A stretch of 64,000 bases of DNA. Source: Pocillopora damicornis. Its lineage: Eukaryota. A program made the translations under genes and the position numbers. Each line of letters starts with the position of its first letter. Position 1 is the stretch's first letter. The stretch is taken from contig NW_020844153.1 of assembly GCF_003704095.1 (NCBI RefSeq), positions 1-64,000 on the forward strand, written 5' to 3'. Under the pieces are notes generated by a model. That model saw only the letters and a list, made by a program, of their open reading frames with translations, did no database searches and had not been told where the DNA came from. Shown one piece after another: positions 1-37,784 of this stretch.

Positions 1-1473
1 AATGAATTTTAATGAGTCCACAAATAAACAAATTTGACAAACCTGCGCTGCCTCGTCCCCAGAGAGCAAAGCCATCCATTTCCAGAAACTGTCGGTGATG
101 TTTGTCAATGGCTGAAAGATTGTCGAGACGAACAAGCGGATATTGTCCAACCTAACCACCATATTATCCCAGACTCGAACGAGATATGTCCCAGTTAGAT
201 GAAAAGGATGAGCAAACATCGACCAGTAAGAGTGACCGGACGGAAAGATACTTACATAGGTAAAAGTAAAAGCAAAAAAAATGACAGCAATAATTATCAC
301 CGTCATTTTTGCATCGCAACGTCCGCTCAAACGTAGAATGATCCTGCCGTGGTCGCTGCAAACGGCAAACACATAATCGAGGAGTCTTTTGACCTCTCTC
401 ACACCTCTGGAGACCTTGCCACAGATAACTCTCGTGCCATGTTTAATCCAAAGCATCACTATTATTGCTATGCCGCACAAAGAACACAGTTGCCAAAAAC
501 TTCTCCAGTCGATTCTCAAATTTAAGGCCCAGTCTGAGAAAGATGAAACGACAGTAACCACGCCACGTAACGTAGTGGAACTAAGGCAACATAGGATAGG
601 TTTAATCGGTTCCGGGAATAGGTTCCAGATGAAACAGAGAACCCACTCAAAAATAACCCACACCTTCACCAAAGTAATACTTGCACCACTCACAACAGCG
701 AAATATCCATAAAATACGCAGAAATAACATAGTAAGTGAAATACGAACTGTACTGTCAGAATAATCACGAAAATGGCGAAAATTTTTATCGCGGCAACCG
801 CGGCGCAATCAGCCGAAGAACATCCCCTCAAGCTATCCACCCTGTCATGAATCCTTTTTGTTTGGCTACGGATGATGGTAAATAAAAAAGCAAATAGCGT
901 CTTGGGCTGTTCAACCACATTGAAATCGTTGTCGCCGAGGAAGACCAACACAAAAATAACCCACATGTCCTCCAAAATCATATAAACGCTGCTCAATATT
1001 AGCGCAAAACAACCACATAACACGCAGAAATAACAAAGTAGTTGAAATACGCCCTGAACTATCAGGATGATCATGAACACTATGGCGACTGTTTTTATCG
1101 GTTCAAGCACCACGTAACCAACCGAAAAATGTCCCCTCAAGCGATCAATTCTATCGAAAATCATCCTTTTCTGGTTACAGATGATGGTACATAAGGAATC
1201 AAAGAGCTTCTTGAGCTGTTCAAGCACATCGGAAACCCTTTCGCCGAATGCGACCCACACGATAATAACCAACGCATTCACCAAAATCATATACACGCTA
1301 CTCACTATTAGCGCGAAATATCCACAAAACAAGCAGAAAAAACATAGTGTATGAAATACGCACTGAACTGTCAGGATGATCATGAACAATATGGCCAAAG
1401 TTTTTATCGTCACAACTGCGGTGTAATCAGCCGAGAGATTTCCGCTCAAACGATCCATTCTGTCGTAAATCAT
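1..1473 (-). CDS. Multi-transmembrane tandem-repeat protein, 5' part (>=491 aa, runs off window start); paralogue of the N-terminus of the TM-WWE-PARP gene at 3961-6986
   Basis: Manual scan found no stop codon in this minus frame from the ATG at 1473 to base 1, so the ORF track omits it. Translation begins MIYDRMDRLSGNLSADYTAVVTIKTLAILFMIILTVQCVFHTLCFFCLFCGYFALIVSSVYMILVNALVIIVWVAFG. It has three 309-bp (103-aa) hydrophobic repeats, then DWALNLRIDWRSFWQL and YLVRVWDNMVVRLDNIR, matching 5637-6699. Confidence 0.75.
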   Translation of the reverse strand, partial: MIYDRMDRLSGNLSADYTAVVTIKTLAILFMIILTVQCVFHTLCFFCLFCGYFALIVSSVYMILVNALVIIVWVAFGERVSDVLEQLKKLFDSLCTIICNQKRMIFDRIDRLRGHFSVGYVVLEPIKTVAIVFMIILIVQGVFQLLCYFCVLCGCFALILSSVYMILEDMWVIFVLVFLGDNDFNVVEQPKTLFAFLFTIIRSQTKRIHDRVDSLRGCSSADCAAVAAIKIFAIFVIILTVQFVFHLLCYFCVFYGYFAVVSGASITLVKVWVIFEWVLCFIWNLFPEPIKPILCCLSSTTLRGVVTVVSSFSDWALNLRIDWRSFWQLCSLCGIAIIVMLWIKHGTRVICGKVSRGVREVKRLLDYVFAVCSDHGRIILRLSGRCDAKMTVIIIAVIFFAFTFTYVSIFPSGHSYWSMFAHPFHLTGTYLVRVWDNMVVRLDNIRLFVSTIFQPLTNITDSFWKWMALLSGDEAAQVCQICLFVDSLKFI

Positions 1474-1503
1474 CTTCGTTTGGCTACGGTTGATGGTACA
1501 TAA
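640..1503 (-). repeat. Three in-frame 309-bp coding tandem repeats
   Basis: The anchor tgatggta recurs at 873, 1182 and 1491 (period 309); the translated units align (DRxDRL..IKT.AI.FMIILTVQ.VF..LCYFC..CGYFA). Confidence 0.85.
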
Positions 1504-1592
1504 AATCTCCTTTTCCGTTGCGAAAGGTCGTTAGTAGTATTGTAACATCTATGAAGCTCGCAATTCTACAGCTGGGAAGGGAGGTGTTTAAC

Positions 1593-1800
1593 ACGGAAGT
1601 GGTAATTTATTCATTTTTCATGAAAGTGAGGTTAACATTTTTGGTTTCGTTTCAATGACGTTTCCATGGTAATAGAGAAGAATAAGCACGGACGTGTGTT
1701 TGAACCCGAAGTTGGTCGATATTTTCCCTTGAGATTTTCACAGATCTCTCGCTTGTAACGTTGAAAATGAAAATGAATCGTACGGCAATCTGCGCAAAAA
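1593..1800 (-). promoter_or_regulatory. Putative promoter block with ETS-like (acggaagtg 1593-1601) and ISRE-like (ggtttcgtttca 1643-1654) motifs; homologous to 7085-7500
   Basis: Visible similarity to the region upstream of the paralogue (gaggttaa, gtttcgtttcaat, agaga, gcacggacgt.tgtttgaa, gcttg.a.cgttgaaa). Confidence 0.55.
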
Positions 1801-3263
1801 GCAGTTTATCAAGGATTAAGCCTTGCCAAACGTTTTCGTGTAGATTCATTGACAAATTTGTGAATATTAATTCATTACGCTGGCTTCCCGTTGTCTGAAT
1901 AAAATTCTTTTGTCTTCGGAACGATCTTGGAATTGAGAACACTGTCGTTTTCTCGGAATCCTAGTCCTCATTTCTCATTGAATGTTTGGTTTAAAAAGCG
2001 ACAAATGATTTCGAGAGAGTTTTCTATAATGAAGGCGCATTTTTTGAGCACTCTTTTATTTGAGGGCTTCATCTCAACAAAACCAAATTGGTAGAGCAAA
2101 ACTGACTGATAAATCATGCTCGTGGCAGCGTTGAAATTTGTGGACCTCAGTTCTAGTCGATAACCAGGGATGAATGACAATAAAAATTAACTCTGTGCTA
2201 TAACATATACTGAATGGAATTTGGATGTCTTTTTTGGTTCTGAAATTCGCCACTGAAGACACTCTACTCTCAACACGGTGGTATGGGTGCAGCGTAAAAA
2301 AAAGAAGCATATCTGCATAATTATGTTATTTTAATTTTATAATACGCTTTCCAACGCTATGTTACTCAGCCAACAGTTTCTGTGAAAATCATTTCACTAA
2401 ACAGACCAGCTGTCAGGTTGAAAATTGCAAAAACAAGCCATTTTCCTCAACCCAGTCATGTTAGGAGAACATTGTCGTTTTCTCGGAATTCTAGCTCTCA
2501 TTTCCGTAAAGTGTTCAGTTTCAAAACGGGACAGACGATTTCTTGGTCGAGTGAGTAAGTCAATATATCTTCAGGGACCTTGCCATGTTTGTCTTGGTAG
2601 TGTTTAGATATAGAAGATGACCGTTGTTTATGTGTGTCCACACCTGCTTATGCACTTCGATGTTCTAAAGAGATGCAAAAGAAAAATTTGATCACTTGGT
2701 GCACGAGATGTTATTCATCAGAGACTTAAAACCAACTCTGATCGTGCAATCCGACTTAATCCGTGTTAAATCCGGATCTTAATCTTAATCTTAATCCCGC
2801 ATTCTTTATCATGTAAATGTATGGCAGTTATTAATACTCGCAGAATTCATTATCTTAACGATAAAAGTTACCTTGACAATTGCGTCATGAAGACTCTGAA
2901 ACGTGGGTTCATCGCTATTTTTTACGTGTTTATTTTTATACTAAACAAATAACAACTTCTTACACATAAGATAATGAAATCCCTCTGGGAAATTAGTCCG
3001 CAGAACAACGAAAAAACAGCAGCTTTTTATCGTCGGTTGCAAAACAGTGTTGTATGACTGTAATAGTAATTCCATTTTTAGTCCTATCTTTGTTGCTTAA
3101 AAATAAAAATATTAGCTTTTATGGAGGACTGTTCTTACTATTGAGAATTCCAGAGCAGTCGGTGGAATGCCGTATCAGTTGCAGTTGTCATCAATCATGT
3201 GCTAGAAGCTAAAACTAATAAGCCTTTTCTCAGCCTCTAAAAGTGTGAAACTCTTTTACAGAC

Positions 3264-3264
<1 letters not shown>

Positions 3265-3317
<53 letters not shown>
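3265..3317 (+). repeat. (GATA)n microsatellite, probably the 3' tail of the adjacent LINE fragment
   Basis: About 13 perfect GATA units directly abutting the LINE 3' end. Confidence 0.95.
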
Positions 3318-3730: not shown

Positions 3731-4550
3731 TTTAAAGTATTTACAAAACCACACCGTTTTTCCTTTCTCAACTTTTTTGAAAGTAGCCTACAGTTTCTTA
3801 TCTGATTATCAAATCCTTCTCGCAACCAGACAGTTTTATGGGTACATATGTACATCATAACCATAACAAGTTGCACGTGGTAAATGGTAGAAGCCACCCA
3901 CGCTTTCCTAAAAGAATAGATTTTCATGAAACAAAGATTTTTATGAACAATGAAAAAGTAAAGGATTAAACATGACTTTTGGGGGTCAATGTTTTTGCAA
4001 TCGAGTGTAGTCTCAGAAAAGTTTATCGAGCCCATCGTAAATTGAGTGGTTGAGAAGCAAGGTTTCGGATTGGAAGTTATTGCTCTCTGTGAATTGAATC
4101 TTTTCAGATGCAAACAAACAGTTCAATACTGGAAGATATATTCTGGGTAGAACTGATCAATGTCAAAGACAATAAACATAGTTGGCTTCAATGCGTCATC
4201 CACACAGGAGTCATAATAAAGGATACCAGCTCCATTCAAAGGTTGCTTGTGGGGTGGTCTTCGATAGTTGGGGTTTCCCTTTACATACGAACCCACGAGG
4301 ACTTTGGCCACGAACATAAATCGAGACCTATTGGCATCTTCTTTTGCTTAGTTGTGGCTGTAGGATACTTTCACCGCAAAGTAGCTTCCTTGACCATACA
4401 AAGTAACGGTCGCAGTGCCACTTAGCCGCCAATCAAAGTTCTCTTTACAGATAGCCTCTACGGAATCTGAACTGGTTCCATGGAAAAGGCTTTTCTCGTT
4501 GACCCTCTGTTGATCACCGTTTGCTAGTTGTGTCATGTAGTCTTTTTTCC

Positions 4551-4650
4551 NNNNNNNNNNNNNNNNNNNNNNNNNNNNNNNNNNNNNNNNNNNNNNNNNN
4601 NNNNNNNNNNNNNNNNNNNNNNNNNNNNNNNNNNNNNNNNNNNNNNNNNN
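4551..4650. other. Assembly gap (100 N)
   Basis: Run of n. Confidence 1.
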
Positions 4651-5639
4651 TCAATCATTATAATCTGTGAACAAGACATCTTACCTTTTAAAGACGGTCA
4701 TTTCTTCAGGTGATATAAGTCTTTCTGGTCTTCGTTTCACCTTTCTTTTGGTACCGTATTGCATGTTTACTTGGTGCATGCCTTTCTCTGAATGAAAGAC
4801 CAAGTAGTACTCATGAGCTTTGACTTTGAAATTGAACGTATAGTCTGTCTCATTTCGCTTCAGCCCTTTAACGAAAGCTTGCTCTATCAGTTCTTGTAGA
4901 TTTCTTCCCTTAAAAACAAAATGTGAGTCGATATTAATGCGGATCGACTAACACTGTCGAGTAAGATGTAGTTAGTTCTCTTAAGGAAATGACATCTCAT
5001 TTGTTGATTTTATAGAATTCTAGTGGGTGCCATAATGCGATATTTTTAATAGAGTTTTTCAAAGTGCTCAAACAGGCAGCCATCATGCAATACTACTCGA
5101 ATTTATCTTTAATCGGTTTTACAGGAATTATGATTTAAACTTCAGATACATTTGAGAGATATTTCATAAGGGAGAAATACCAAATACTTTGTATCTTTTA
5201 AGAAGAGTTTTGCGATTACGATAGCTTGTAAAATACGAAGTGAAATCAGAAAGTAACGTCTAGCGATGAGGAGGACGATGAAAGGAAACAATATAAAGCC
5301 TGACATATGAATGTTCTGGGCTCTCTAAGATTTCAAACACAGTCTAAAGATACACTATAAAAGAACAGTTTACCAAGTGGTCCTTCTCGTACATACACCA
5401 AACGCCGCCATTATCTTCCCAGTACCATTTCCAGTTGGTGGAGAGAGTGTGACTTGGGTTTGTGGAGCAAGGTGGAGTGGCAAAGCACCTTAATTTTCCA
5501 GAGCCATAGCCTGCGGCGCAAATTCCTGCCGTTGGTTTTATTGACAAGGTCATGCTGTTAACGTCGATTGAGACTTCACATTCCCATGGTGGCAGAGTCT
5601 TTCCATCCGGCACTACGAAGTATCATAAAGTTAAATTCA

Positions 5640-5975
5640 CAAAATAACAACCATATTCTCCCGGACGCTAACAAGAACGACTAAAAACAACTCAAGCAGG
5701 TAATACGAAACATTCAGGCCATATGAAGCGAGCAAAGCCAACCATTCCAAGAATCTGTGGGCGATACTGTTCAATGCCTCAAATAGTTTTGGGATGAACA
5801 TGCGGAGATTGTCCAAAATAACAATCATACTTTTCCAGACACTAAAAAGAACGACTGAGAACAATTCAAGCAGGTAACATAAAACAGTCAGGCCGTATGA
5901 AGCGAGCAAAGCCATCCATTCTAAGAAACTGTGGACGATACTGTTCAATGCCTCGAAGACCTTCGAGATAAACCA
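5640..5975 (-). repeat. Two in-frame 174-bp (58-aa) hydrophobic repeats
   Basis: caagcagg at 5693 and 5867; the unit FEALNSI.H.FLEW.ALLASYGL.V..YLLELF.VVL.SV is repeated. Confidence 0.85.
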
Positions 5976-7084
5976 GCAGACATTCTCCATTATAACACAG
6001 ATATTATCCGAGAGTTTAATACTGGTTAATGCCCCAAAGTTCATCGAGACGTATACGCGGAGATTGTCCATAGTAAGGACCATATTCTTCCAGACGCTAA
6101 CGAGATATGTCTCAGTTAAATGAAGAAGATGTGTAAACATCGACAAAACAGAGTGTCGTGAAGGAAAGACGCTCGCATTTGTAACAGTAAAAGTCAACAA
6201 AATGGCAACAATTAATATCGCCATCATTTTTGCGTTACAAAGTCCGCTCAAACGATCCATTTTTCGAATCATGATCCAAGTTTCGGTACTGCATACGGCA
6301 AAACTGGAATCGAAGTGTCTCTTGGCCTCTTTCACACCTATGTAGACATTACTACAGATAAATCTCGTGGCATGTTTGCCCCAAAGCATCACCATTTTCA
6401 TTATGCCGCACAAAAAAAAAAAGTTGCCTAAAACTTCTCCTGTCGATTCTTAAATTTAAGGCCCAATCTAAGAAAGATATAATTAGGTAACGCAGAAAAG
6501 TAAACACGCCATTTAAAGCGAAAACCATAATGGGCTTTAAGCAATATATGGCAACTGTTATCGACCCCACAAAGATTTTCGAGATGCAATGGAAGACATA
6601 CTTAGAGGTAACCCACACGTTCATCAAAATCATATCTGCGCCTTTCACTATTACCACAAACGCAAAACATATGAGGGAACTCAAATATCCACATAACAAC
6701 CAGAAATGAGATTGTAAATAAAAAATATCGTCTCGACTGCCACTATAATCATGAACAGTATGACAGCAATTTTTATCACCGCAACTGCTGCGTTACCAAC
6801 CGAAGAATGTTGGCTCAAGCGATTCATCTTAACGTAAATGTTCCTTGCTTCGATCCAGATGATGGTACATAACGAATCAAATAGCCTCTTGGCCTGTTCA
6901 ATTGCATTTGAAACCTTGCCACGCAAGGCATTCTGTTCAACACTTCCGCAGTGTCTTTTCGAGTTGTGGTTGTATATACCAGACATTTTATATCTAAGAA
7001 TTTCGCTCAATACCAACAGCAGGATCGCATATCTTCTAAATTTCGTTTTCCGTTTCGAACGTTCCTCGTAAGTTGTAAAAGCTA

Positions 7085-8235
7085 AGCTAAGCCGGAAGTG
7101 GCGATTGCGTGATCTTTGACGAGGTGAGGTTAAAAATTTCTGTTTCGTATCATTAAATTGTGTCAAAATTCAAAATTCGAAATTTCTAGTAGAATAATAC
7201 AGGCCGGAAGTGGCTATTGTGTGATTTTTCACAAGGGTGACTCGTTCTCCTGAAAAATCACGCAATTCAGTTTCGTTTCAATAAAATGTGCCAGTAGAGA
7301 GAAATAACGGCACGGACGTATGTTTGAAACAGGAAGTTTATTTATGTTTTCCTTCACGTTTTTCACTGTTCATTTGCTTGAGATCTTAAATGATATTTTC
7401 TCTTGAGTTCTTTGGATTTTTTCTGCTTGCAGCGTTGAAACAAGGAATATTGAAATGACTGGCTGAGCGCAATGTGCACCGAAAGCAGTTGTCATCGACT
7501 TTCGGTCTCTGTCAGCGGTAAAAAAAGCTATTTTCCTTTTGGAAGGATCATATGACTAGGATGTTTGATGGCTAGCGAAGAATGCTGTTCAAAATTTAAA
7601 CTGACCCTAAAAAAATGTTTTAACCAGATTTTTCTCGTTACTATTTGTGACCAGTCTTGCTCTGCTTCCTGTCATTCAAATGTACAGTGAGGAACAGAGA
7701 AGTGAGCTACAATTGCATTTTGAAATTAGATTCAGTGCGCGTCTTTCAAACACAATACTTGGCACGTGCGTATTAGACAAAACAAACTGTGAATGACAAT
7801 ATATGATAATGTCATCTGAATTCAATTGAGTCTGATTATTTCTAAAAATAGGGAATTACTCTGCGCTATCGATGGAAGAAAAAAGTGAAAATTATTTTTT
7901 GGGCGGCTTAGGGCCAGTCTTTTATTTTGAAACCAAAACTGTGTTGGAAATAGTAAAAAGAGTTATTTTGCGACGCAAGGACAGGAAAAAAGGTATAAAT
8001 TTAAAATAAGTTTTAGTTCCCTGGAGTAGATATTTCTTCCTTGTTATTTCATTATATATTTTTTCAGCCGTAAAACAATCGAAGTTATCTCCTTCCCTCC
8101 CGAATAAAACAAAAATACGATGAAAGAAAAAAAAGAAAGAAAGTTGTATCCCCACCCTAGTCCTGTTAGGAAAGTGTTGTCGTTTTCTCGGAATTCTCGC
8201 CCTCGATTCCATGAAGTTTTCGTTTCAATGCCAAT
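7085..8235. promoter_or_regulatory. Divergent promoter region between the TM-PARP pseudogene and PARP12-like gene A, with ETS-, ISRE/IRF- and GAS-like motifs
   Basis: ccggaagtg at 7092 and 7204 (local ~112-bp duplication); cagtttcgtttca 7268-7280; aaaagtgaaa 7881-7890; ttctcggaa 8185-8193; agttttcgtttca 8215-8227. Confidence 0.5.
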
Positions 8236-11200
8236 ATGGCGGATGATGTTTTGGTTGAGAAAGTTTTCAATTTTATTTGCGGTAGTGGCGGATTTGTGGA
8301 GTTACCTCTACTTTTGAAGGATTCATCGCCTTTGAAAAACATAAAATCTAACTTGGAAGCGAAGAACTGGCTGACAAATCATGGCCGTGGCCGCTTTGTT
8401 GAGGTGAAAGATATAAATGATGAAGTCATAGGTGTTCGCGTTGAGCTGAAAAAGAAAATTTGTCAACAATATCTTGCACGGGGTTCATGCAGGAGAGCGA
8501 AGGGTTCGTGTAAATTCTGGCACATTTGTAAAAGCTTTATCGAGGGAAAGTGCGAAGGAGACTGCCGTCGTTCGCACGATTTTCTCGACAACGACAACGA
8601 AGCGAAGACCAAAGACCTAAATATCGAGAAGCACCCGAATGGCACACAACGGAACATCATTGCCTGGAGTCTACCACAGGTTTGTCAGTTGTATTTGAGA
8701 GATGAATGTAAATCGGAAAAATGTCCATATCTTCATATTTGCCCGAATGTAGTGCGACAATTGCCATGCAGTTGTAGTTTATCGCATAATTTGACTGAAC
8801 TTAACAACAAGAAAATACTGAAGCAGTATGACCTTGTGCCACATCAGTCGATGAAAACTGCTTTTGTTTGTAGCAGTATTTTAATCATGAACGAGCAGAG
8901 GTATTTTGGCAAAGGTAAATTCACAAGTGATGATACAACCGTTAAAAAGGCCTCACTTAAAAATAACGCAAACGAAAACAGCTCACAGCTTGGGGCAAGC
9001 CAAGAGCCGAACTCGAGTGGAACAAAAGGTTTTCATGTGAGCTCAAAATGCAAAGAGTTTCTTAATGATGATATGGAGGCGAGTTCGAAGAAGAATGAAC
9101 CGAAACCCGGTCACTCGAAGGCAAAGAAAGAGCAAAAACAGAAGCGTATACCGAAATACGTCAACAATTTGGCGAGTTGTGCAGATGCTTCAGCAAGATC
9201 TCAGAAAAATCCCGGGTTTCTAAATATACACGAAGAGGAAGAAGAAGGCCACTCGAACTCATCTTCAGAAGACAACAAACCCTATTCTAAAAGTTTCCTC
9301 TCTGCTAATCAAGGTGAATCGATTCATCAGATTCCAGAGTCGAAAATAAGTCACGAAAAGACTGGTAACGAAGTCAAATTTCGTCATCCTAAACTCGTGT
9401 CAAATAAGAAACCTGAAGCGGATCCGTGTACCTCAAATGGCGCAGCCAAAGGTGGTGTTGTTGATGATGACCCGCCTGTTTTGCCCGTTGATGATATCGG
9501 AAACGATTTTGTGAAGAATTGGGTCCTGGGTGTTGATGATTTTTCCTCTGAGTCCAGTCAAAGCCTTGGAAACTCTCAAATTGAAGAAAAACCAGCGGAA
9601 CGCAAGCGAAAGTCATCCATATCAAGTTCATGCAGCTCTGTTCCGAATCCACAAAAGAATACACCCTCTAAGAAGGCTGTCTTTGACTGCATTCTGAAAG
9701 AATACAATGGTACTGTCTCCTTTCTTGATATCTCGAAAAGAAAAGACTTGTTTCCTGAAGGATGTGGAGATATTGCAGCGTGGTTTATAGCAAGGAAAGA
9801 AAGCTTTCTGCTTAGGGAAAGTAAAGACGGAACACTGAAAGTGGACGTTCTTTGTAAACGAGCAAAATTATGTTTTAACCAGGATCATTGCTCCAAAGTG
9901 GGTTGCCCTTATCTACACGTGTGCCGAGATTACATCGCTGGTTTTTGTAGATTTGGCGGTAGATGCCAAAGAAACCATAGTTTTGAATACGATGAAAGCA
10001 GAATGCACATTTCTAAACTTAAATTATCTGGGTTTAGCGAAGAACAGCTGCGTAAACTCGTTCAGCTGTCAATACCCCAAGTATGTCTGGACTATAATGA
10101 AGGACACTGTGTACTCGGAGAGAGTTGTTGGCAAATGCATATTTGCAAGGATATGATAAAGAAGAAGTGTTCAGATGGAGTCATTTGCAGTCTCAAGCAT
10201 GAAGAAGCATTGTTGACGGCTCAAGCAAACACTGTGCTAAGTAGATATGGCCTGAAAGTCTGGGATGACAACGTTCAACCGATTTTGCGAACCCTTCTCA
10301 TCTGCGAGAGGAAATCTTCAGTTGACTCTACACCCCTTTTAAAAGACACTGTTTTAACAGCAGCTAGTCTGACATCGTCGAGCAGTGCAGTGGGCAGCCG
10401 AAAAGAGAAAAACCCGAGTGGTGCCATTCCTTATTCACTTGCATCCGTTTCTGTAGCCAGAACACCCAGCACTGTTTCAACGCCAAGTGGTTCGAGGACG
10501 TCAGAGGGAGCAGCTGGCGGCACAAAAGTGAGCGATCAGAATAGTAGTCCAATTCCTTTTACAGGTGCCGTTGTGAACAACAGTGAAGCATCCGAACGAA
10601 AAGTCTTTGAGTGCTTGTGCAAAGAATACAACTGCTCAGTTTCGTTTTCAGTGATTTCTAAACGCACTGATTTGTTCACTACCGGATTCAAAGACGTGGA
10701 GTCTTGGTTTCGAAGAAGAAATGGGAGCTTTTTGATCTTAGAAAACCCGGATGGGGCAATTACAGAAGTAAGTGCCTTTTCCGCAAAGGTTCGACTCTGC
10801 TTCAGTTACAACGCCCCCTATGGAACTTGTACAAAAGACAACTGCTCATTCCTGCACGTCTGCAGAGATTATATCACTGACTCCTGCGCCAACGGAGCAA
10901 CATGCCCACGGAACCATCAATTCCGCAACGAGAAGGATAAGGCTTTGCTGTCTAAGATCAACCTCGACAAGTTCACAGACGAGCAACTTCGCCGGCTTGT
11001 GCTGTTTTCGTCACCACTGATTTGCGTAGAGTACAACGATGGTATTTGTGATCGTGGCGATGCTTGTCCTAGAATTCACATGTGTGGCAACCACTTGAAA
11101 AAGTGCTCCCGAGAAAGACATGGTTGTATCTTAGAGCATGAATCCGCCATGACCACTGACCACACCAAAGCAGTTCTCGAGCGTTATCGTATGGACTACT

Positions 11201-14200
11201 TAAAACCAGGCGCAGCAAAGAAGGCTATTTTGCTTTTTGACGACTTGGCACAAAGTAGAGAAGCAGGTATGTTTCACTAAGAAAGCATACTGGTTTCAGA
11301 TTGTGCTCATGTATCCAGCAATATTTGTGATAAAGTATAGGTACAAAATTAAAATTGCTTTGATTTTATTCGGGAAGCTTTTTTTTTAATTTTATTTTTA
11401 TTTTATTTTATAAACTAGGGTTTTAAAACTAATGTCTTTGGTCATAATTGGACAATACAAAGGTGTTTTGTTAGGATTAATCGATGATTCTGTGGCACTA
11501 TCAGTCCCTAAATATGCTCAATTTCGTTTGCTCTCCCTATAGAGGTAAATGAAAAGTGATCCTTTTTTTTCCAAGGATAACGAAAAACGTGTCTTTCTCC
11601 CTCAGTCACACTGCTGTTTTTATCGTCGTCAGGTCATGTTCACACTGATCAACCAGATGCATATATCTGTTCAGATTTCCTTCTGGGAAAGTGTAAAAAG
11701 GGCATCAAGTGTTCTGAGCACCACTGCTCGTTGCCTTACCACTGGCAATACAGAGTCGAGAATAAAGGAGTCTGGAAGAGTTTTAGTGAGACTGACAATG
11801 AGAAGGTGGAGAAACTTTACTGTGACGCAATGATGAATGATTGCTCAGCCAATGGCTTCAAGCTGTCTTTCAAAAGGTAAGCCAAGGAGAGTCGTGTTTG
11901 AATACAGAGTATTTTGCAGAGGCAAACATAAATTGTTTATACAAGCTCAAGTCTAAAATTATGGGTTTACAAGCTCACTTCTTTGTAACCTCGATATTCC
12001 CTTATTCGTTGCTATCTGTTCTGGTAAATTGTGTTGTAATAATTTCTCATGATTAATTTATATGTATGGTTCTTTTTGAACCTCATTTATTCACAAGACC
12101 TTTGTAGACAAGCCCCTCAAGTTTAGATTACGATTGATGATCTGGTTTAGATCATCTTTCAGAAAGTGTTCTATTCTTGATGCAAATTCCTTATTAAAAG
12201 AAGCCCGCAATGAGGAATTTAACTTGATAAATAATGTACCCAAAATTTCATGATACTGAATTGGCACACAGATCGTAGTTAACTTAAAAATCGATTTTTT
12301 TAAGTCATGGATTCCCTCTCTTGGATGAAGAGTATACCGTGCAGTTCCTGTTTGAAAATGAGCTGATGCTTGTGCAGACAGATTTTGAAGTCGTCGCAGA
12401 CATTAGGCGGCTGTCCACAGAACCCTTCATCAATAATCCCGTTAATCCTTTGGCTGCTGTGTGGACTTGGTACTGGAAGGACGAAAATGGCATGTGGCTC
12501 GCGTATGGCTCAGACTACCTGGTAAGATTTTATGTGAGGTGCCATTTCTGGGTAATTGTTACAAACATGTTTTAAAGAAGAAATAACAAGTAAAGGTAGT
12601 AATTAGCCATGCTTTTTAAGCCTCATGTTATGTTAGGAAACTGTTAAGTCATGGACGTGTTAATAAGCAAACGTTATTTTGTTCAAGTCATTTGAAAAAA
12701 AAAATGAAAACAGTTAAACAAGCAGTAAACACAATCAGAAATCAGTAGATTAATTCATTGGAAATTTTTGTATATTTTCAGGGGAATGATCTTCAGCGAC
12801 CCATAGAAGAGGCATTCTTATCCACCCCATACTGCTATAAGTTTAAAATTGCCGAGCAAGACTATGTACTGCATTTCCTTAAAATGGAACAAGAAAACTT
12901 GAGGTATGGCACTAAACGACAAGTAAGGAGAAGACCTGGAGAATTTAGATCAGGCGCAGACATCCTGGAGATTCGAAGGTAATTTCAAGTGACAGTCAAA
13001 ACTTTCCGCAACGGCCACTTCTGAGGCAAAGAAATTTAGAAAGGGTGCAACACAGCACATTTTTTGTAAGAAGGGTCGAACTACATTTCTGAAGTTGTTA
13101 ACATGTTTATTTCAGCATATTAATACGTAACACACTCAAAGTAATGTACTGAAAAGAAAGGAAACATTAAACACCAAAGGATTGAAGCACACTGTTTTAT
13201 CATATTTTAAATACTTACTGCATGAAGAGAGCGATATGACCTTTCGGGGAGTAAGCCATGTTGCCCTGGTCAGGTGAGGGGTCAAACCTAGAGCTATCAA
13301 TCTGGAGAATGTGGCAAAGCCAGGAACGCCAGGATATTGGAATATCTCGGAGCACTAGACTGTATCGAAACAGTCGCAGCTTGACTTAACAAAATGCTCT
13401 TTCTGGCAAAACGGAGTGCAAAATGGTGCGATAGTAGTGGTGGAACTCCCCAAAAAACTAGGGAAGTTTGGGTCAGGTTACAGATAACTTTAAAATTTTG
13501 GTGGGTACATTAATTGCGCTTGAGTGTTTTTTTTTTTTTATGTCTGTCTTGCTTAAGTATAAGTATTTTCAATTTTTTTCGCCCAAGGTCATCCAGGAAG
13601 GGAAAACCGATTACAAATGTATCAAATACTGAAAGGCCTAGCAACTGGGCTTCTATGCCATCTACTAAGCAGTACACACGTGTCACGTTAAGCACTGTAT
13701 CATCTGAGTACAAAGAAGTGGAGAGGTTATTTAAAAGTTCAATCAAAAAAAGGGTCGTTATCCGTAGAATCCAGCGTGTGCAAAACTCTTTCATGTGGGG
13801 AAAGTATCAAAGGTATTATTTATTTATTTATATATATGTAGGAAATCTTTGTTTCGATTTTTCCGTCTTACAGTGCTCGATACATAAAAATAGAGCGTGA
13901 TATGTACTGTGTTAGGGGGAAAAAACAAGGAGACTACGCTTTCATCCCGAAAAGCCTGTTTAGTTATTAAAATCTCTCTTCAGGGGATTTTAAAATCCCC
14001 TGAAAAGTGATTTGAGTCAAAATCAACTTTTTGTGCTATATTATTTCAACGTTTTCGTAAATAATAGAAAAACTATTCACCTCAGTGTTGGTGGATTGTT
14101 TGAAACATTCTTATGTTGAAACATACTCTATTCTTCCGTGGAAATGGTCGTAATTGGGTATACGTAAAACGCTCTTTACCTGAAGCCTTGTTTTTGTTTG

Positions 14201-15018
14201 TTTTTGAAAGGAAAAAGGAATATTTGTTGACGATCAAGACAGGCGGTCACAAGTTTTCCCCCTTGAACGAAAAGAGGTTGTTCCACGGAACCAGCCCCGA
14301 TGCTGTAGAGGCCATTTGTAAACAAAACTTTGACTGGCGCTTAAACGGAAAGAACGCCACTGTTTATGGTGAAGGAAGTTATTTCGCTGTAAATGCCTCT
14401 TACAGCGATGCTTATGCAAAGAAAGACGCAAATTCGTCTCAATTCATATTCTTAGTCAAAGTCCTTGTTGGAACTTACACCAAAGGCGACTCCAGCTATC
14501 GAAGACCGCCTCCAAAACAACCATCCAATCCTTCGAGTGACCTGTACGACTCTTGTGTGGACGACGAGTACAATCCAACCATATTTGTGGTGTTTGACAC
14601 CGATCAGTTCTATCCAGAGTACATCATTGAGTATTCTGATGAAAGTAGAAGGTATTCCGGAGCTCACGGAGCTGGCCCTCAGACAGGAGCGTATGCAGTA
14701 CCTTCTTATAGCCGAGCTGCCCCATCTACCAGCTCCTTTAATCCCACAAGTGGTTATTACTCATCTAGTAGTGTGGCATCGAGTAGTTATGGCTCAGCCT
14801 CTAACAGCTCGTCTAGTACACCGTACCGCAGCACAGGTACAAGCTACTATTCAGGTACGGCGAGCTCTCATAATACAACATATTCATCGCACATCTCAAG
14901 CACAGGAACATCAAGAAATTATTCTTCATCAACGAATACTTCTAATGTGTCACACCACAGTTCAACTCCTAGCAGCTCCTCGAAATCTTCCAAAGACAAC
15001 AAGTGCTTGGTAATGTGA
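8236..15018 (+). CDS. PARP12: PARP12/ZAP(ZC3HAV1)-like protein A, ~1573 aa: 3x(HTH+4 CCCH) - CCCH - WWE-WWE - mono-ART (H-Y-I) - Ser-rich tail - CaaX
   Basis: Exons 8236-11266, 11633-11876, 12305-12521, 12782-12978, 13588-13812, 14211-15018; all introns GT-AG, phases 1,2,0,2,2, total 4722 nt in frame. Motifs: CCCH fingers, LPYHWQY, WTWYWKDENGMW, LFHGT, NFDWR, YGEGSYFA, YDSCVD, TIFVVF, QFYPEY; ends KCLVM*. Confidence 0.9.
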
Positions 15019-16194
15019 CTTCAAAGAAGGAGAGAGTGTGTCTGTGTTTCGTACTAATGATGGATAATGCTATATTTGTTGAAGTAGGTTTTTGTAAAGG
15101 AGTTTCTGAATCTAGGAGCACTAACTGCAGACGTAAATTTCTTCGAAAAGTTCACCGCAGTTTTGAAGCATACACGTAATTGATTTTAGGACTGTTATGT
15201 GGAAGTTACTTATGCTTTTCGGTGTCTGTCTTTATGACGTATGATTCAAATAGTTTCACATGTGGTGATGTAACTTCCTTTCCTACTAAGCTTTTGAACA
15301 ATTCTCTAAGTATGTAAACGGTTCAGTCGTATGATATGTGGATTTGTTTCTAGGTGCCGTTTTAAAAATTCTTTATCGTTCACCAATGCCACTAGTGAAC
15401 GTGGATCGAAAATTTGATGTGCAGATAGTGTCTTTGTAAAATGCAGCGGAGACAGCAACCTCCTGCACTATGGATATTTGATCGCCCGATAGAAAAAAGT
15501 CCTGTTCGAAAACACGAAAAAAACAAGACAAAATTCAAACACACACTGAAGTGCAAAAAAAAAAAAATAAATAAATAAATAGAAACAAAGGCAAACGAGA
15601 AAAAACTCTGAAAACGAGAACAAACTCAAGTTTAGAAGCAAAACAAAAAGTTAACAAACGAGACAAAACAAAAGAAGAGAACCGCAGAAAGCTAGGAGTT
15701 AAACTCTTTAGAAGAGATAGGTGGGTTTGGGCTATTAGTTTAATCTCATTATATTCTTTATTTTTTTTTTCTTAGAAATTACGTAAAAATGCTTTACAGT
15801 TAAATGAATAGACGGGGTCGGGCACCTGTCTTTATCCCTGTTATCGTCAATTTAAATCATGTAATGATTCATGCGAGGGGGCAAGAAATAAGCAATATCT
15901 CACAAGTAGCAGAGTGTAGGGAACATGAGCAAACAATACTTCTACGTCAGTGAATCATCGCATGATCTAAACTAGATGGTAGCAAGGATCTAAACACGTT
16001 ACCCAAGTACATATATCATTATTCACTGAGAGACCTCCCTGAATCGAAAAAGCTCTCTAGTCATATAGACTTATCGCTTAACTTGTGATGGTTTAAGCGG
16101 TTAGAAATACGGTTGTTAATGATCGTTTCGTGAGTGACAAGCTAAGACCAGCGTTAAGCTCAGGTACTTTATTCTTCAGAAAATGGAAACATGA

Positions 16195-16530
16195 ATGAGA
16201 ACAAGAACAATGATGATGATAACGATAACGATGATGAGAATTACAGTGGTAGATGATTGTAATGATGATAAAAAAAATCAAATCAAAAAAATTCTTGATC
16301 AAAAAAGGAACAATAAGAGCAAAAATAATAATGATGATGATGATGATGATGACGACGATGACGGTGACGGTGACGATGACCTCGAAGACTATGATAACGA
16401 TGATGATAATGATGAGGTCGATGAGGATAACGTTGAGGATAACGAGGACGCTGACGATATCGATGACGATGACGATAAAAATGATGACGATGACAATAAC
16501 GTTGGTAATGAAAGATGTTAACGTTAATAA
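16195..16530 (+). repeat. Degenerate (GAT/GAC/AAT)n low-complexity trinucleotide tract
   Basis: gatgatgat/gacgat/gataac runs, which produce poly-D, poly-I and poly-H ORFs in several frames. Confidence 0.85.
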
Positions 16531-18352
16531 TGTCTGTCGAAACAAACAAAAAATAATAACATCAACTCAGAGAATGGTTTGGTAACCTCTATGAAAAAAC
16601 TAAAGCGTTACTTTTCTCTGTTAAGGAAACCACACAACGTATTAACGCGGTTCTTAGCCCCACGATATTTTCAAAACAACCTACATACGTCGTCGTGGTC
16701 AGATAGAATTGTATTTGATATACGATTCAAATTACCTTCGCCTTGCCGAAATAGAAAAGTCGTATCTGCTTGAGTGTTTCCTTCTATAGTGCAAACGGGT
16801 GTAAGAAAACACATCCAGTGTTAAGCTAGTCCGTTTAACACAATTACTCTGATTTTTTAAATACTGTTCGAAGAGTATTCAACCCAAAAGTTGTGAAGTG
16901 TAATGCCGAATTCAATGTTTTTCAGAATTATGTTAAATTTGTTTGCCATGAGCGGGCAGTTTACTGAGATGTATTATGAAATACCTTTGATTCGTTATGT
17001 GCACAGTTAAAAGGCTTAAAAATGGGAGTTAAATTAAGTTATTCTTGCAATTGAAATAAGTGTGGACTGATGTAAAATTATTGAGCTCAAATAAATAATT
17101 CAAGGATTACACAATGCTTCTTCTTTTATTCATTCTTTCATCGATCTTTGAAATTATTACGCATCTTAAACTGCTTAGCTACCTGGTTGAGTTTGGAGTT
17201 GCCCTATAGGGAAGATATTCAAACTTCTGAAAACACTGAAAACGTAATATTCCGTCCAGACTTAACATATTACCCTATTTATTTGCTCATTTTGCGGCGA
17301 CATAAGTGCGCAATTTAGACCTCATTCATAAATGGCGGCCAACTTTAATTTATGTAAATCTACGTTTCTGGTCTTGACAGCAAGTTTGAAAACAAAATAA
17401 TTTCCACGTTAAAGCTAGGCTAGGGAGTTAATTTACATGTATGTACAAAAGAGAGAGGGCTATTTTCACACGCACACGCACGCATACAAAAAGGTTTGTT
17501 ATCAATTATATCTGAGAGGATTGCATGACACTTTCATTGTACAGTTAAGTCCAATGTGTTCAAAAGGGGCACTTGGGATTCTTTGATTTTCCGCCGGTTT
17601 GCATTCATTTGAATAATTTTCGATGTCTCGGTCCTTGATTCATTGAGATTCTCGAACTTTCCGTTCTGTTTCCGTCGGTTTCTATTTTTTGCTAAGATAG
17701 TTTTCCTTTACGTTTTCATCTTCGCCTATCTTTTCCCTGGGGTCATCGATCGCCTCTCTTCAGATCTAGTCCACCCACATTCTTGGTGCGGTTTTGAGAT
17801 ATTTGTGTTCCTGTTTTCGTTTCAGAAACAATTGAAATTGCGTTCCTCAGTTGCTTCGCGTAATTGCAAAGAAAGACAGTCCTCCAAAACAGCTTCAAAA
17901 GTAGATAAAACTGGAATAGGTCAGTGAAATAAATATGTTTTCCCCTACAGTGGGTGCTTAACCTTTAAAGAAAGTAGTGAATTTACCAGACTTTCAGGTA
18001 AACGAGTTAAGTTTCCCAGTCAACAGTAACGCAACTGGTTCAGGAGTTAATTCAGAAGCGATTTTATTAGTGAGGTAATGTAAAAATGAATAAAACTAGA
18101 TTGGCCACTTCATTTCTATTCTCAAACCAAACGTGGCATGTCCTTTCTGTTTCCTGATGGAAAACCCACCTTTTCTTGCTTTTGAAAAGAAACCATTCAG
18201 GCCTGAAATTCTTGTATACTAAATGAAATTGCAATTGGAATATTTATTTAACACTTGAGAGCACAAAATAGGAACGGTCGTGAAAATTACAATTTGAGGA
18301 ACTACTAATTGCACGATTTCTTTTGTAATTCTGGGGAACACACTTATCATAA

Positions 18353-19240
18353 ATGTCGAAAATTTCCCCTTGGCGACGAAATGGAGGAAATCACAGCTCC
18401 GAAAGCGAAGAGGAATCTTCTGAAACATTTTTAGACATCAATTTGAAATTCACTTCGAATGGCAATTCTTCGGGAAAGATCGTAGGATTCCCTCCCATCA
18501 CTGATGAATTGGATAAGAAAGGAAGCACACCTTGTATATCGTTTATGGACGAAGATTTAATGATAGATCACACAAAGAAAATGCCAGAACATATGAAACA
18601 GCGATGGAGAAGGGCTGCAATATGGGTGACGGTGTTCTGCATTGTTGTATCTTTTAGTATAACAATTGCTTCGTTTCGAGCCGCCGGGGCGTACGACAGC
18701 TCTTCTGCTCTCGCGCTCGCATTTGATTGTGCTAATGCTTTCTTATGCTCCTTCGTTGTTCTGTGGAGATTCAAGACAGCAAAGAACGGCAGTTTGGGGT
18801 ATAAAAGAGAGAGAATATCCTGTCTTGTGTTTGCGACTTCTTTTATTGTCAGCGGAACTTTGACTGCGGGATTATCAATCAAAAGAATTGTCGAGAAAGA
18901 TCATCCCACCAAAACGTTTTGCATCGTGGCTGTTCTAAGCGTTGGTTGCTTTCTGTACACTTTGCTAGCCGTGATGCAGTGTTACGTTTCTAAGAAACTT
19001 TTAAGTTCAGCGATGCTCGGGAGCTGTATAGACTCCGTGTTATCGGCTGCACTGATGTTTGGCCTTCTTATTAGTAACTGCGCCTTTTTACTTGTTCATA
19101 CAGACTTGTGGTATCTAGACCATTCCATGGCAATTTTAGTTGCACTAGTGACAATACTTTGCGGCTTGCAAATTCTGGTGGAAGTGTTGTTTTATAAGAA
19201 ACTTCCAATAGATATGATGCCTTGTAAGGAATGCTATTAG
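18353..19240 (+). CDS. TMEM163: TMEM163-like (CDF/ZnT-related cation transporter), intronless CDS, 295 aa
   Basis: Six hydrophobic segments. WRRAAIWV...SSSALALAFD....VVLWRF...RERISC...KKLLSSAM...WYLDHSMAILV parallels TMEM163 (YRKKALWVS..SASAFGFAFD..IVLWRY..REYIAC..WYLDGSIGVL) as recalled. Confidence 0.8.
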   Translation: MSKISPWRRNGGNHSSESEEESSETFLDINLKFTSNGNSSGKIVGFPPITDELDKKGSTPCISFMDEDLMIDHTKKMPEHMKQRWRRAAIWVTVFCIVVSFSITIASFRAAGAYDSSSALALAFDCANAFLCSFVVLWRFKTAKNGSLGYKRERISCLVFATSFIVSGTLTAGLSIKRIVEKDHPTKTFCIVAVLSVGCFLYTLLAVMQCYVSKKLLSSAMLGSCIDSVLSAALMFGLLISNCAFLLVHTDLWYLDHSMAILVALVTILCGLQILVEVLFYKKLPIDMMPCKECY

Positions 19241-34056: not shown

Positions 34057-34489
34057 TGTGTCAATTAAGAATGGTCGAGCTGGCAAGCCTCGGTATTGAT
34101 TCACATGTCTTTTTTTTTTTTTTTTCACTTTTCTTAGAAAGTGACAAAGTCTACTAAGCGGGGGTACGGAGGTGCGTCAGTCTTACGACTGAAACAAAAA
34201 AATAGAGAGAAGATTAATAAAACGGAGGAAAAGATCAAAACTCCTAACAAAGAAGAAAAATTTACCCTCACTTTTGAAGTTAGACCCTTCTATTATCTGG
34301 ACATTCCTAGTCTAACCAAACGTGCAGTACTGGACAACCAGACTGATCGAGCCCTCCCTAGTGTGTTTTGATATAGTCTTACGCCCGCAATGCGACCTGC
34401 TGGTCATTAACTTGGTAACCACGTCGCGCGGCGGCCATCTTGCTAAGTTGTTTTTTCGTTGATTTGAGAATTTTAGCCTTACCTGAAAA
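34057..34489. promoter_or_regulatory. 433-bp bidirectional intergenic region between PARP12-like B and STEEP1
   Basis: Divergent ATGs at 34056 and 34490; IRF-like tttcacttttc 34123-34133 overlapping GAS-like ttcttagaa 34131-34139; YY1-like gcggccatcttg ~34431-34442. Confidence 0.55.

Positions 34490-37784
<3,295 letters not shown>

What the first reader, a model, noticed from the sequence alone, without database searches (positions are those of the whole stretch)
1..1473. Hidden open ORF: polytopic membrane protein of 103-aa repeats, probably the N-terminus of a TM-WWE-PARP
Seen: a stop-free minus frame of >=491 codons, absent from the ORF track. It has three exact-period 309-bp repeats, each with about two long hydrophobic Cys-rich segments and an amphipathic linker (EQ.KKLFDSLCTII...DRxDRL). 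Its paralogue at 6986-5637 sits directly upstream of WWE and PARP exons. Inference: a PARP12-family gene whose CCCH RNA-sensing exon is replaced by a repeat-expanded membrane domain. I recognise no family for this repeat.
Basis: partly seen in the sequence, partly recalled or inferred. Interest (0 to 1): 0.85.

Follow-up and report, generated by a model that had tools for sequence, protein, structure and literature searches.

The report
Coral membrane-anchor exon of PARP12-like gene
The open frame is a real coding exon for a repeat-built membrane anchor found only in a few stony corals; in sister genes it replaces the RNA-binding zinc-finger exon of a PARP12-type ADP-ribosyltransferase, though this copy's link to a PARP domain about 27 kb downstream is only inferred.

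Summary
Window 1-1473 (minus) is 491 stop-free codons, with a 309-bp repeat (2.6 copies) that encodes amphipathic-helix plus hydrophobic units. No Pfam or PDB family matches.

It is a conserved, weakly constrained coding exon of a pocilloporid coral. It is 98.3% identical to an orthologous contig, against 92.6% for the flanking DNA, and omega is about 0.5. The coding part probably ends at a conserved CAG|GT donor (exon 43-1473); bases 1-42 are read-through.

The family-level inference is right. A fully spliced mRNA contig (P0150), NCBI models from Stylophora pistillata (XP_022804545.1) and a Pocillopora damicornis protein (RMX47701.1) all join homologous membrane exons to WWE and PARP domains. 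Exon 1 uses the same phase-1 donor as the CCCH exon of the neighbouring PARP12-like gene.

For this copy, orthologous contigs show this order downstream:
- a 900-1000-aa exon of 58-aa repeats;
- about 25 degenerate WWE-derived cassette exons;
- intact WWE and PARP exons about 27 kb downstream on the same strand.

Linkage to PARP is therefore plausible but unproven, because no transcript was found. The paralogue at 5637-6986 is damaged in this assembly.

The architecture already sits in public annotation as "uncharacterized", so I rate it a new variant of a known kind.

The parts
43..1473 (-). Probable exon 1 (477 codons) of the membrane-repeat gene. It runs from Met 1473 to a conserved CAG|GTTTGT donor (GT at 42-41).
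   Evidence: Open frame. The donor is identical in all orthologous contigs, while the tail after it diverges; in L006 a stop follows 2 codons later. Omega is 0.53 (CI 0.38-0.74), and the ORF is 98.3% identical to L001 against 92.6% for intergenic DNA.
1..42 (-). Stop-free read-through into the probable intron. In orthologues the frame stops 19 codons beyond the window edge.
   Evidence: P0001 and P0002 are 510 aa.
1228..1473 (-). Repeat unit 1 (82 aa). Its amphipathic helix is truncated at the start.
919..1227 (-). Repeat unit 2 (103 aa): a K/R-rich helix followed by about 65 hydrophobic residues.
   Evidence: The AF2 model of this unit has helices 2-33 and 37-101, pLDDT 77.5.
610..918 (-). 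Repeat unit 3 (103 aa).
115..414 (-). Fourth, divergent unit (VREVKRLLDYVF…RLSGRCDAK plus a transmembrane segment). It leads into one 58-aa-type repeat (58-210).
   Evidence: Alignment A2. R58 tblastn hit at 58-210.
1474..1533 (-). Remnant of the unit-1 helix upstream of the Met, closed by an in-frame stop at 1531-1533.
1594..1602 (-). CCACTTCCG (ETS-like) motif 121 bp upstream of the Met; a promoter-proximal candidate.
   Evidence: There are 3 matches in the window against 0.24 expected, and all lie upstream of the two membrane ORFs. The motif sits at about -115 to -230 in L001, L005, L008, L013 and L014, and at -424 in L006; it is absent upstream of the membrane ORF in L009, L010, L012 and L015.
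5637..6986 (-). Paralogous membrane exon (P0008 type), damaged in this assembly. It has +TT near 6725/6724, +T near 6422, and a stop at 5637-5639 beside a deletion scar (5631-5639).
   Evidence: The blastn comparison with the intact allele L005 shows 98% identity, the indels, and loss of L005 9769-11831.
7093..7213 (-). Two CCACTTCCG motifs upstream of the paralogue's Met.
4126..5619 (-). WWE exons (5347-5619 and 4684-4911) and the PARP catalytic exon (4126-4536) downstream of the paralogue. The N gap 4551-4650 lies where the first PARP exon would be expected; it was not filled.
8236..14667 (+). Head-to-head canonical PARP12-like gene. Its parts are a CCCH exon 1 (8236-11268, phase-1 donor), exon 2 with a zinc finger and WWE1a (11632-11857), WWE exons (12309-12521 and 12779-12979) and PARP exons (13628-13813 and 14209-14667).

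Best explanation
Window 43-1473 (minus) is the first coding exon of a lineage-specific paralogue in a small coral gene family. In this family, a helical membrane-anchor exon takes the place of the CCCH zinc-finger exon of a PARP12-type mono-ADP-ribosyltransferase.

The exon encodes four copies of one unit. Three are tandem 103-aa copies and one is divergent. Each unit is a K/R-rich amphipathic helix followed by about 60-65 hydrophobic, Cys-rich residues. I infer that this stretch forms a two-pass transmembrane hairpin, so that all the basic helices, and eventually the C-terminus, face the cytosol.

Shown in family members: this exon is spliced through a phase-1 donor to WWE and PARP exons. The likely result is a catalytic domain (H-Y-I type) tethered to an endomembrane instead of to RNA.

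Inferred for this copy: the exon is spliced at CAG|GT (phase 0) to a 900-1000-aa exon of 58-aa amphipathic/hydrophobic repeats. It then passes through an amplified array of frame-preserving, degenerate WWE-derived cassette exons. It ends in intact WWE and PARP exons about 27 kb downstream.

The locus belongs to a fast-evolving, structurally polymorphic tandem PARP12 cluster. An innate-immunity role is assumed by analogy with PARP12 and ZAP.
For: The exon is coding and under constraint:
- Chance probability of the open frame is about 2e-12.
- The ORF is kept at 461-510 aa in clusters of 95, 11, 116, 110 and 20 member sequences.
- Omega is 0.53 (CI 0.38-0.74), and the ORF is 98.3% identical to L001 against 92.6% for flanking DNA.

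The fusion is real in the family:
- Spliced mRNA L012/P0150 aligns to genomic L009 as six exon blocks.
- L010 retains intron 1 while introns 2 and 3 are spliced out.
- P0126, P0150 and P0257 have Pfam WWE and PARP domains with E-values down to 1e-28.
- Phase-1 donors and acceptors are shared with the CCCH gene.
- The head-to-head arrangement with a CCCH PARP12 gene is also seen in a distant coral assembly, L015.

Evidence specific to this copy:
- The donor is conserved, but the tail after it is not.
- The acceptor is conserved, and the next ORF has no conserved ATG.
- A phase-1 donor at the end of the repeat exon matches the exon-2-like acceptor.
- The cassette exons keep open frames and AG/GT sites.
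- Intact WWE and PARP exons end the array on the same strand.
- A CCACTTCCG motif lies upstream of the Met in the window and in the orthologous and P0008-type loci; it was not found upstream of the P0033/P0119-type or L015 membrane ORFs.
Against: - No transcript or annotated protein was found that joins this copy's exon to anything. All Logan contigs that carry it are collinear with the genome.
- A second 58-aa-repeat ORF and many degenerate exons lie between the exon and the PARP exons, so more than one gene, or pseudo-exons, are possible.
- Selection is weak. Omega confidence intervals for the closest pairs include 1.
- Membrane topology is not established. AF2 gave pLDDT 46.5 for the whole exon, and only two straight helices for a single unit with pTM 0.36.
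- No transmembrane predictor was available.
- The neighbouring paralogue is broken, which shows that copies in this cluster do decay.
Confidence: 0.6

Rival explanations
1. This is a stand-alone gene for a membrane-only protein of about 480-510 aa. The frame is read to the stop 19 codons beyond the window and is never joined to WWE or PARP. In effect it would be a PARP-less derivative of the family, possibly a regulator or decoy of its PARP-bearing relatives.
For: - The 510-aa ORF with its stop is kept in close relatives.
- It has its own upstream motif.
- Intron-1-retaining transcripts exist in Stylophora and would give a membrane-only product.
- No spliced transcript for this copy was found.
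Against: - The tail after the CAG|GT donor is not conserved. It stops after 2 codons in L006 and is frame-shifted in P0003.
- The next ORF begins exactly at a conserved acceptor, in phase, and has no conserved ATG.
Confidence: 0.2
2. This is a decaying duplicate. The exon is a recently duplicated, still-open remnant in a churning tandem array and makes no functional product.
For: - The adjacent paralogue carries frameshifts and a 2-kb deletion.
- The first repeat unit is truncated by a stop.
- The downstream exon-2- and exon-3-like copies have lost the Cys/His/Trp signature residues.
- Omega is 0.5-0.7, and some confidence intervals reach 1.
Against: - The ORF stays open at 71-88% protein identity in diverged orthologues (P0003, P0004, P0005).
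- Omega is significantly below 1 against L006.
- The ORF is much better conserved than the flanking DNA.
- The splice sites are conserved.
Confidence: 0.15
3. The long hydrophobic open frame is a by-product of a tandem DNA repeat or a transposable element and is not a host gene.
For: The 309-bp and 174-bp tandem repeats are conspicuous at the DNA level. No known protein family matches.
Against: - Only the first 60% of the ORF is repetitive.
- The repeat copies differ with dN/dS of 0.4-0.7.
- Homologues are spliced into annotated host PARP genes.
- The synteny is fixed, and only 23 representatives exist among 1.84 billion proteins. That is not a dispersed-element pattern.
Confidence: 0.03

Closest known systems
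PARP12 / ZAP (ZC3HAV1)-type clade-3 mono-ADP-ribosyltransferases (CCCH-WWE-PARP)
   Same: Family members share exons 2-6 with the canonical coral PARP12-like gene next door. These cover two WWE domains and a PARP catalytic domain with H…Y…I-type motifs. They use the same exon phases and sit in the same tandem cluster.
   Different: The N-terminal CCCH zinc-finger array is absent. A helical, hydrophobic repeat region of about 290-810 aa replaces it. RNA binding through CCCH fingers is therefore not expected.
Stylophora pistillata LOC111341798 (XP_022804545.1 / PFX16748.1, UniRef A0A2B4RK56) and Pocillopora damicornis pdam_00023751 (RMX47701.1)
   Same: They have the same membrane-unit family (motif …FDS..TI…D+.D+LSGHSSAGY… plus hydrophobic helices) joined to WWE and PARP.
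   Different: They are only about 35-45% identical to the window ORF in the unit. They lack the tandem 103-aa triplication and the long 58-aa-repeat exon. They are compact six-exon genes. They are annotated only as uncharacterized, hypothetical or auto-named PARP, and I found no paper on them.
[quoted passage not shown] 2014, PMC4245714)
   Same: It is a clade-3 PARP catalytic domain behind an N-terminal membrane segment.
   Different: I did not compare it by sequence here. As described, it has a transmembrane domain plus PARP. The paper does not report a repeat-built polytopic region or a WWE pair.
PARP16 (tail-anchored ER PARP) and the farnesylated long isoform of ZAP
   Same: The functional analogy is a mono-ART or ZAP-type module held at an endomembrane (my own knowledge; PARP16's C-terminal transmembrane segment is also mentioned in PMC4245714).
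   Different: PARP16 has a single C-terminal anchor and belongs to a different PARP clade. ZAP-L uses a lipid anchor. Neither has an N-terminal repeat-built anchor.

Membership tests
PARP12-like (clade 3) ADP-ribosyltransferase gene | PARP catalytic domain (PF00644) with an H-Y-[I/L/V]-type active site in the same protein | tested here: inconclusive
   The window lacks this part of the gene. In orthologous contigs, an intact PARP exon (LFHGT…GSYFA…MFIVF; Pfam E 1e-20) lies about 27 kb downstream on the same strand, but no transcript links it to the exon. The feature is met in paralogues P0126, P0150 and P0257.
PARP12-like (clade 3) ADP-ribosyltransferase gene | WWE domain(s) between the N-terminal module and the PARP domain | tested here: inconclusive
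   The feature is met in the paralogues (PF02825, E 1e-15 to 1e-17). For this copy, the cassette exons in between have lost the W/C/H signature residues. An intact WWE exon appears only at the end of the array.
PARP12-like (clade 3) ADP-ribosyltransferase gene | N-terminal tandem CCCH zinc fingers (PF25261 / PF00642) | tested here: not met
   Pfam finds nothing in the 491-aa ORF or in P0008, P0033 or P0049. The neighbouring canonical exon at 8236-11280 does hit zf-CCCH_PARP12.
PARP12-like (clade 3) ADP-ribosyltransferase gene | Shared exon structure: exon 1 ends in a phase-1 donor and joins the homologous exon 2 | tested here: met
   This is met for family members. The window's CCCH gene has …GCAG|GTATGT, L005/P0008 has …GGGG|GTAAGT, and L009/L010 also use phase 1; the L012 cDNA confirms the junction. 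In this copy, the phase-1 donor sits at the end of the second (58-aa-repeat) exon.
Coral membrane-unit family (undescribed; contains P0126, P0150, P0257, P0008, P0049) | The unit: a K/R-rich helix with …FDS..T…D+.D+LSG.SS… followed by about 40-65 hydrophobic residues | tested here: met
   phmmer E-values run from 1e-275 to 2e-4 against 23 representatives. Alignment A2 covers 19 units from 8 loci.
Any described membrane-protein family (Pfam-A or PDB sequences) | A significant profile match | tested here: not met
   Pfam gives no hit. The only near-hit is MnhE, E 0.096, below its cut-off and to an out-of-frame fragment of the paralogue. The PDB profile search gives only 7qru_E at E 0.033 for A1 and nothing for A2.
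PARP16-type tail-anchored PARP | A single C-terminal transmembrane anchor after the catalytic domain | tested here: not met
   In P0126, P0150 and P0257 the hydrophobic region is N-terminal and the protein ends with the PARP domain.

The most novel reading that the evidence does not exclude
Stony corals have built a new class of membrane-embedded PARP12-type effectors. An undescribed helical membrane unit replaced the RNA-binding CCCH module. In Pocillopora it is being amplified at three levels: 103-aa units, 58-aa units, and whole frame-preserving cassette exons. This would give a giant, rapidly diversifying, membrane-anchored ADP-ribosyltransferase that acts in innate immunity or symbiont control at an endomembrane.
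Probability: 0.3. Interest if true: 0.65.

Novelty: new variant of a known kind. Interest (0 to 1): 0.48.

Why it matters
PARP12/ZAP-type enzymes are conserved antiviral effectors that are normally aimed by CCCH RNA-binding fingers. Here a coral lineage has swapped that aiming module for a membrane anchor of an undescribed family, and it keeps expanding it. This is a natural example of re-targeting an ADP-ribosyltransferase by exon replacement.

It offers concrete, testable candidates for membrane-localised ADP-ribosylation in cnidarian immunity or symbiosis. It also flags a set of uncharacterized coral proteins (Stylophora LOC111341798 and Pocillopora pdam_00023751) as one family.

The locus also shows how frame-symmetric exons can be amplified into arrays. 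The practical novelty is limited, because the fused architecture is already present in public gene models, although nobody has described it.

Tried and rejected
- **Pfam scans.** Scans of the ORF, its paralogue fragments and six relatives found nothing usable.
- **PDB profile searches.** Searches with A1 and A2 gave only a sub-threshold MnhE-like hit.
- **AF2, whole exon.** Using 21 aligned sequences, the model had pLDDT 46.5 and was unusable.
- **AF2, single unit.** Using 19 aligned units, the model was two straight helices with pLDDT 77.5 and pTM 0.36. It does not resolve a hairpin.
- **Fold search.** I did not run it, because a low-confidence or two-helix model gives meaningless matches.
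- **Transcripts of this copy.** Logan contigs L013 and L014 turned out collinear with the genome and are uninformative.
- **Cluster listings.** The clusters of the 510-aa and 992-aa ORFs held no longer, fused members among those read.
- **Search for annotated fusions in other cnidarians.** A search with the Stylophora membrane region returned only pocilloporid-type sequences.
- **Literature.** Searches by accession and by SRA run found nothing.
- **Corrected conclusion.** From L001-L008 I first concluded that no PARP exon follows this gene. Extending further downstream with L016-L018 showed intact PARP exons, so I withdrew that conclusion.
- I did not search or fold any joined (spliced) model; exons were searched separately by reference. 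The N gaps at 4551-4650, 36551-36650 and 58492-58613 were not filled or looked up. I took no contig for human.

Full report
**Observation**

Window 1-1473 on the minus strand translates into 491 codons without a stop. The frame is open for 19 further codons upstream, to a stop at 1531-1533, and the first Met is at 1473. With 5.3% stop codons on this strand, the chance of such a run is about 2e-12. The ORF track omitted it only because the tool does not list ORFs that run off an end of the window.

Tandem Repeats Finder gives a 309-bp period, 2.6 copies and 75% matches at 698-1505. The protein units are residues 1-82 (truncated), 83-185 and 186-288. Each unit has a K/R-rich helix (…EQxKKLFDSLCTII…DRxDRLxG) and then about 62-65 hydrophobic residues rich in Cys, Phe, Ile, Leu and Val. 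Alignment A2 shows a fourth, divergent unit at residues 354-453. It also shows that the end of each unit resembles the start of a separate 58-aa repeat.

**Is it coding?**

Yes. The ORF is represented by clusters with 95, 11, 116, 110 and 20 member sequences from coral metagenomes (Tara scaffolds in ENA) and Logan assemblies. Lengths stay at 461-510 aa at 71-99% identity.

Against an orthologous contig (L001), the ORF is 98.3% identical in DNA, while the upstream intergenic DNA is 92.6% identical. Against the most diverged orthologue (L006), omega is 0.53 with a bootstrap CI of 0.38-0.74. Between the internal repeats, omega is 0.4-0.7. Constraint is real but weak.

Only 23 representatives among 1.84 billion proteins match the ORF, and none is longer than 745 aa. 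No Pfam or PDB family matches.

**Whose genome?**

Cluster members with names come from Stylophora pistillata and Pocillopora damicornis. The window is 99% identical to a Logan contig, L013. I infer a pocilloporid stony coral, most likely a Pocillopora. I took no contig for human.

**The family is a membrane-WWE-PARP fusion**

This rests on four lines of evidence:
- **Spliced mRNA.** Protein P0150 (947 aa) lies as one ORF on a 3.6-kb Logan contig, L012. That contig aligns to genomic L009 in six blocks. Block 1 is the membrane ORF P0033 and ends exactly at its G|GT donor. Blocks 2-6 are the WWE and PARP exons.
- **Partly spliced transcript.** Stylophora contig L010 keeps intron 1 but has introns 2 and 3 removed, so the membrane exon and the WWE exons lie on one RNA.
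- **Annotated proteins.** NCBI models XP_022804545.1-47.1 (973-974 aa) and P. damicornis RMX47701.1 (667 aa) carry the membrane region followed by Pfam WWE (E 1e-15 to 1e-17) and PARP (E about 1e-28).
- **Shared exon logic.** Three exon-1 types end in a phase-1 donor and join homologous exon-2 sequences: the CCCH exon of the canonical PARP12-like gene in the window (…GCAG|GTATGT at 11268/11269), the membrane exon of P0008 in L005 (…GGGG|GTAAGT), and that of P0033/P0119.

A distant coral assembly (L015) has a single-unit membrane ORF (P0049, 241 aa). It sits head-to-head with a CCCH PARP12 gene and is followed by exons 2-5, the same arrangement as in the window.

**What follows this particular exon?**

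The window stops too early, so I used orthologous contigs (L001-L004, L006-L008, L013, L014, L016-L018).

*First junction.* The frame runs 19 codons past the window edge to a stop. However, a CAG|GTTTGT donor (window GT at 42-41, phase 0) is identical in all orthologues, while the sequence after it is not. L006 stops 2 codons later and P0003 is frame-shifted.

*Second exon.* About 870 bp downstream, a conserved acceptor (…ttcttag|GGAAGAAAC, phase 0) opens a 907-997-aa ORF with no conserved ATG. It starts with a 33-aa fragment derived from the second WWE exon. It continues as about 15 copies of a 58-aa repeat, each an amphipathic helix plus a stretch of about 28 hydrophobic residues. That ORF ends in a phase-1 GAAG|GTAAGA donor, which matches a phase-1 acceptor of an exon-2-like exon.

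*Cassette array.* Next come about 25 exon-2-like and exon-3-like copies and a second 58-aa-repeat ORF. The cassette copies have lost the Cys, His and Trp signature residues. They still keep open frames and AG/GT sites. One subtype is a chimeric, frame-symmetric (phase 2-2) exon repeated every 560 bp or so.

*End of the array.* The array ends, on the same strand and about 27 kb from the membrane exon, with an intact WWE exon, a second WWE exon and two PARP exons (LFHGT…GSYFA…MFIVF; Pfam PARP E 1e-20).

I therefore think the exon most likely heads a very long membrane-repeat-WWE-PARP gene. No transcript shows this, and the Logan contigs that carry this exon are collinear with the genome.

**The paralogue at 5637-6986**

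It does sit upstream of WWE and PARP exons. Compared with the intact allele in L005 (98% identical; P0008, 813 aa), the window copy differs in three ways:
- two extra T in a T-run near 6725/6724;
- one extra T in a T-run near 6422;
- loss of 2,063 bp covering the rest of the 58-aa repeats, the C-terminal transmembrane segment, the donor, intron 1, exon 2 and intron 2.

It stops 24 bp before the WWE exon. The lesions may be real, or they may be homopolymer or collapse errors of the assembly; I cannot tell which. Contig L001 shows yet another arrangement at this place, so the cluster is structurally polymorphic.

**Mechanism (inferred)**

The units are helical in both AF2 runs, but neither model is informative about packing:
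- The whole exon gave pLDDT 46.5.
- A single unit gave helices 2-33 and 37-101, with pLDDT 77.5 and pTM 0.36.

A 65-residue hydrophobic helix is too long for one membrane pass. In the older family members this stretch is split by a short HFRSYF-type loop into two segments of about 20-24 residues. A two-pass hairpin per unit would keep all the basic helices on one side. The last hydrophobic segment of P0008 is followed by RCCFRAVLRK and then by the WWE exon. That fits a cytosolic catalytic end.

I therefore read the region as a membrane anchor that places a mono-ADP-ribosyltransferase on an endomembrane. The analogy is with tail-anchored PARP16 and farnesylated ZAP-L (my own knowledge) and with a sponge PARP12-like protein that has an N-terminal transmembrane domain (PMC4245714).

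A CCACTTCCG (ETS-like) motif occurs three times in the window against 0.24 expected, always upstream of the two membrane ORFs. It sits at about -115 to -230 in five related loci and at -424 in L006, and it is absent upstream of the membrane ORF in the P0033/P0119-type loci (L009, L010, L012) and in L015. For the two gene types present in the window, this suggests that these ORFs are first exons with their own promoter.

**Novelty**

The fused architecture already exists in public gene models, named only as uncharacterized or auto-named PARP. I found no paper on them. The membrane unit has no described family. I rate this a new variant of a known kind.

**Limits**

- I made no search or fold of a joined spliced model; exons were handled separately by reference.
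- I ran no fold search, because the models were not fit for it.
- No topology predictor was available.

Noticed in passing
L016:900-16700 (also L003:6100-21500): There is an array of about 25 exon-2-like and exon-3-like cassette exons. They have lost the Cys/His/Trp signature residues but keep open frames and AG/GT sites. One subtype is a chimeric, frame-symmetric (phase 2-2) exon repeated about every 560 bp. This looks like exon amplification inside a gene.
   Followed up: partly
window 20432-22500 (+): A further CCCH PARP12-like first exon is split into at least three separate ORFs (133, 172 and 163 aa), with tblastn hits to the 1014-aa CCCH exon. It is probably a fragmented or pseudogenised copy.
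   Followed up: no
window 26919-34128 (-): A third PARP12-like gene lies here. It has a 1064-aa CCCH exon (Pfam zf-CCCH_PARP12, E 2.5e-12), WWE-type exons (28794-28985 and 30245-30460) and PARP exons (27870-28043 and 26931-27332). The window therefore holds a cluster of at least four PARP12-family loci.
   Followed up: partly
window 38664-40985 (-): A single 773-aa ORF carries a MACPF/perforin domain (Pfam E 4e-24) and a C-terminal hydrophobic segment. It is an immune-type pore-former gene next to the PARP cluster.
   Followed up: no
window 46776-47687 and 52046-52999 (+): Two tandem intronless rhodopsin-family GPCR ORFs (303 and 317 aa; Pfam 7tm_1, E about 1e-21).
   Followed up: no
L005:4263-7176 (-): In contig L005, the CCCH exon orthologous to window 8236-11280 changes frame between residues 303 and 380. 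The window copy is one intact 1014-aa ORF. This is the reverse of the situation for the membrane paralogue, where L005 is intact and the window is broken.
   Followed up: no
L001:11540-12400: The probable intron after the membrane exon contains a tandem duplication of about 410 bp. Each copy carries the acceptor and the start of the exon derived from the second WWE exon. The first copy could form an 84-nt in-frame mini-exon (GTNPQELKEETFLQELPRNGPDHTFNLR) with an AAGG|GTCAGA donor.
   Followed up: no
window 18353-19240 (+); 42178-42984 (-); 44860-45375 (+); 61192-61584 (+): Other ORFs in the window are a cation-efflux-like membrane protein (just under the Pfam cut-off), an F-box protein, a protein-kinase C-terminal fragment and a trypsin-domain exon.
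   Followed up: no
window 3260-3317; 16093-16545: An (AGAT)14.5 microsatellite, and a low-complexity Ile/Val-rich spurious ORF over simple sequence.
   Followed up: no
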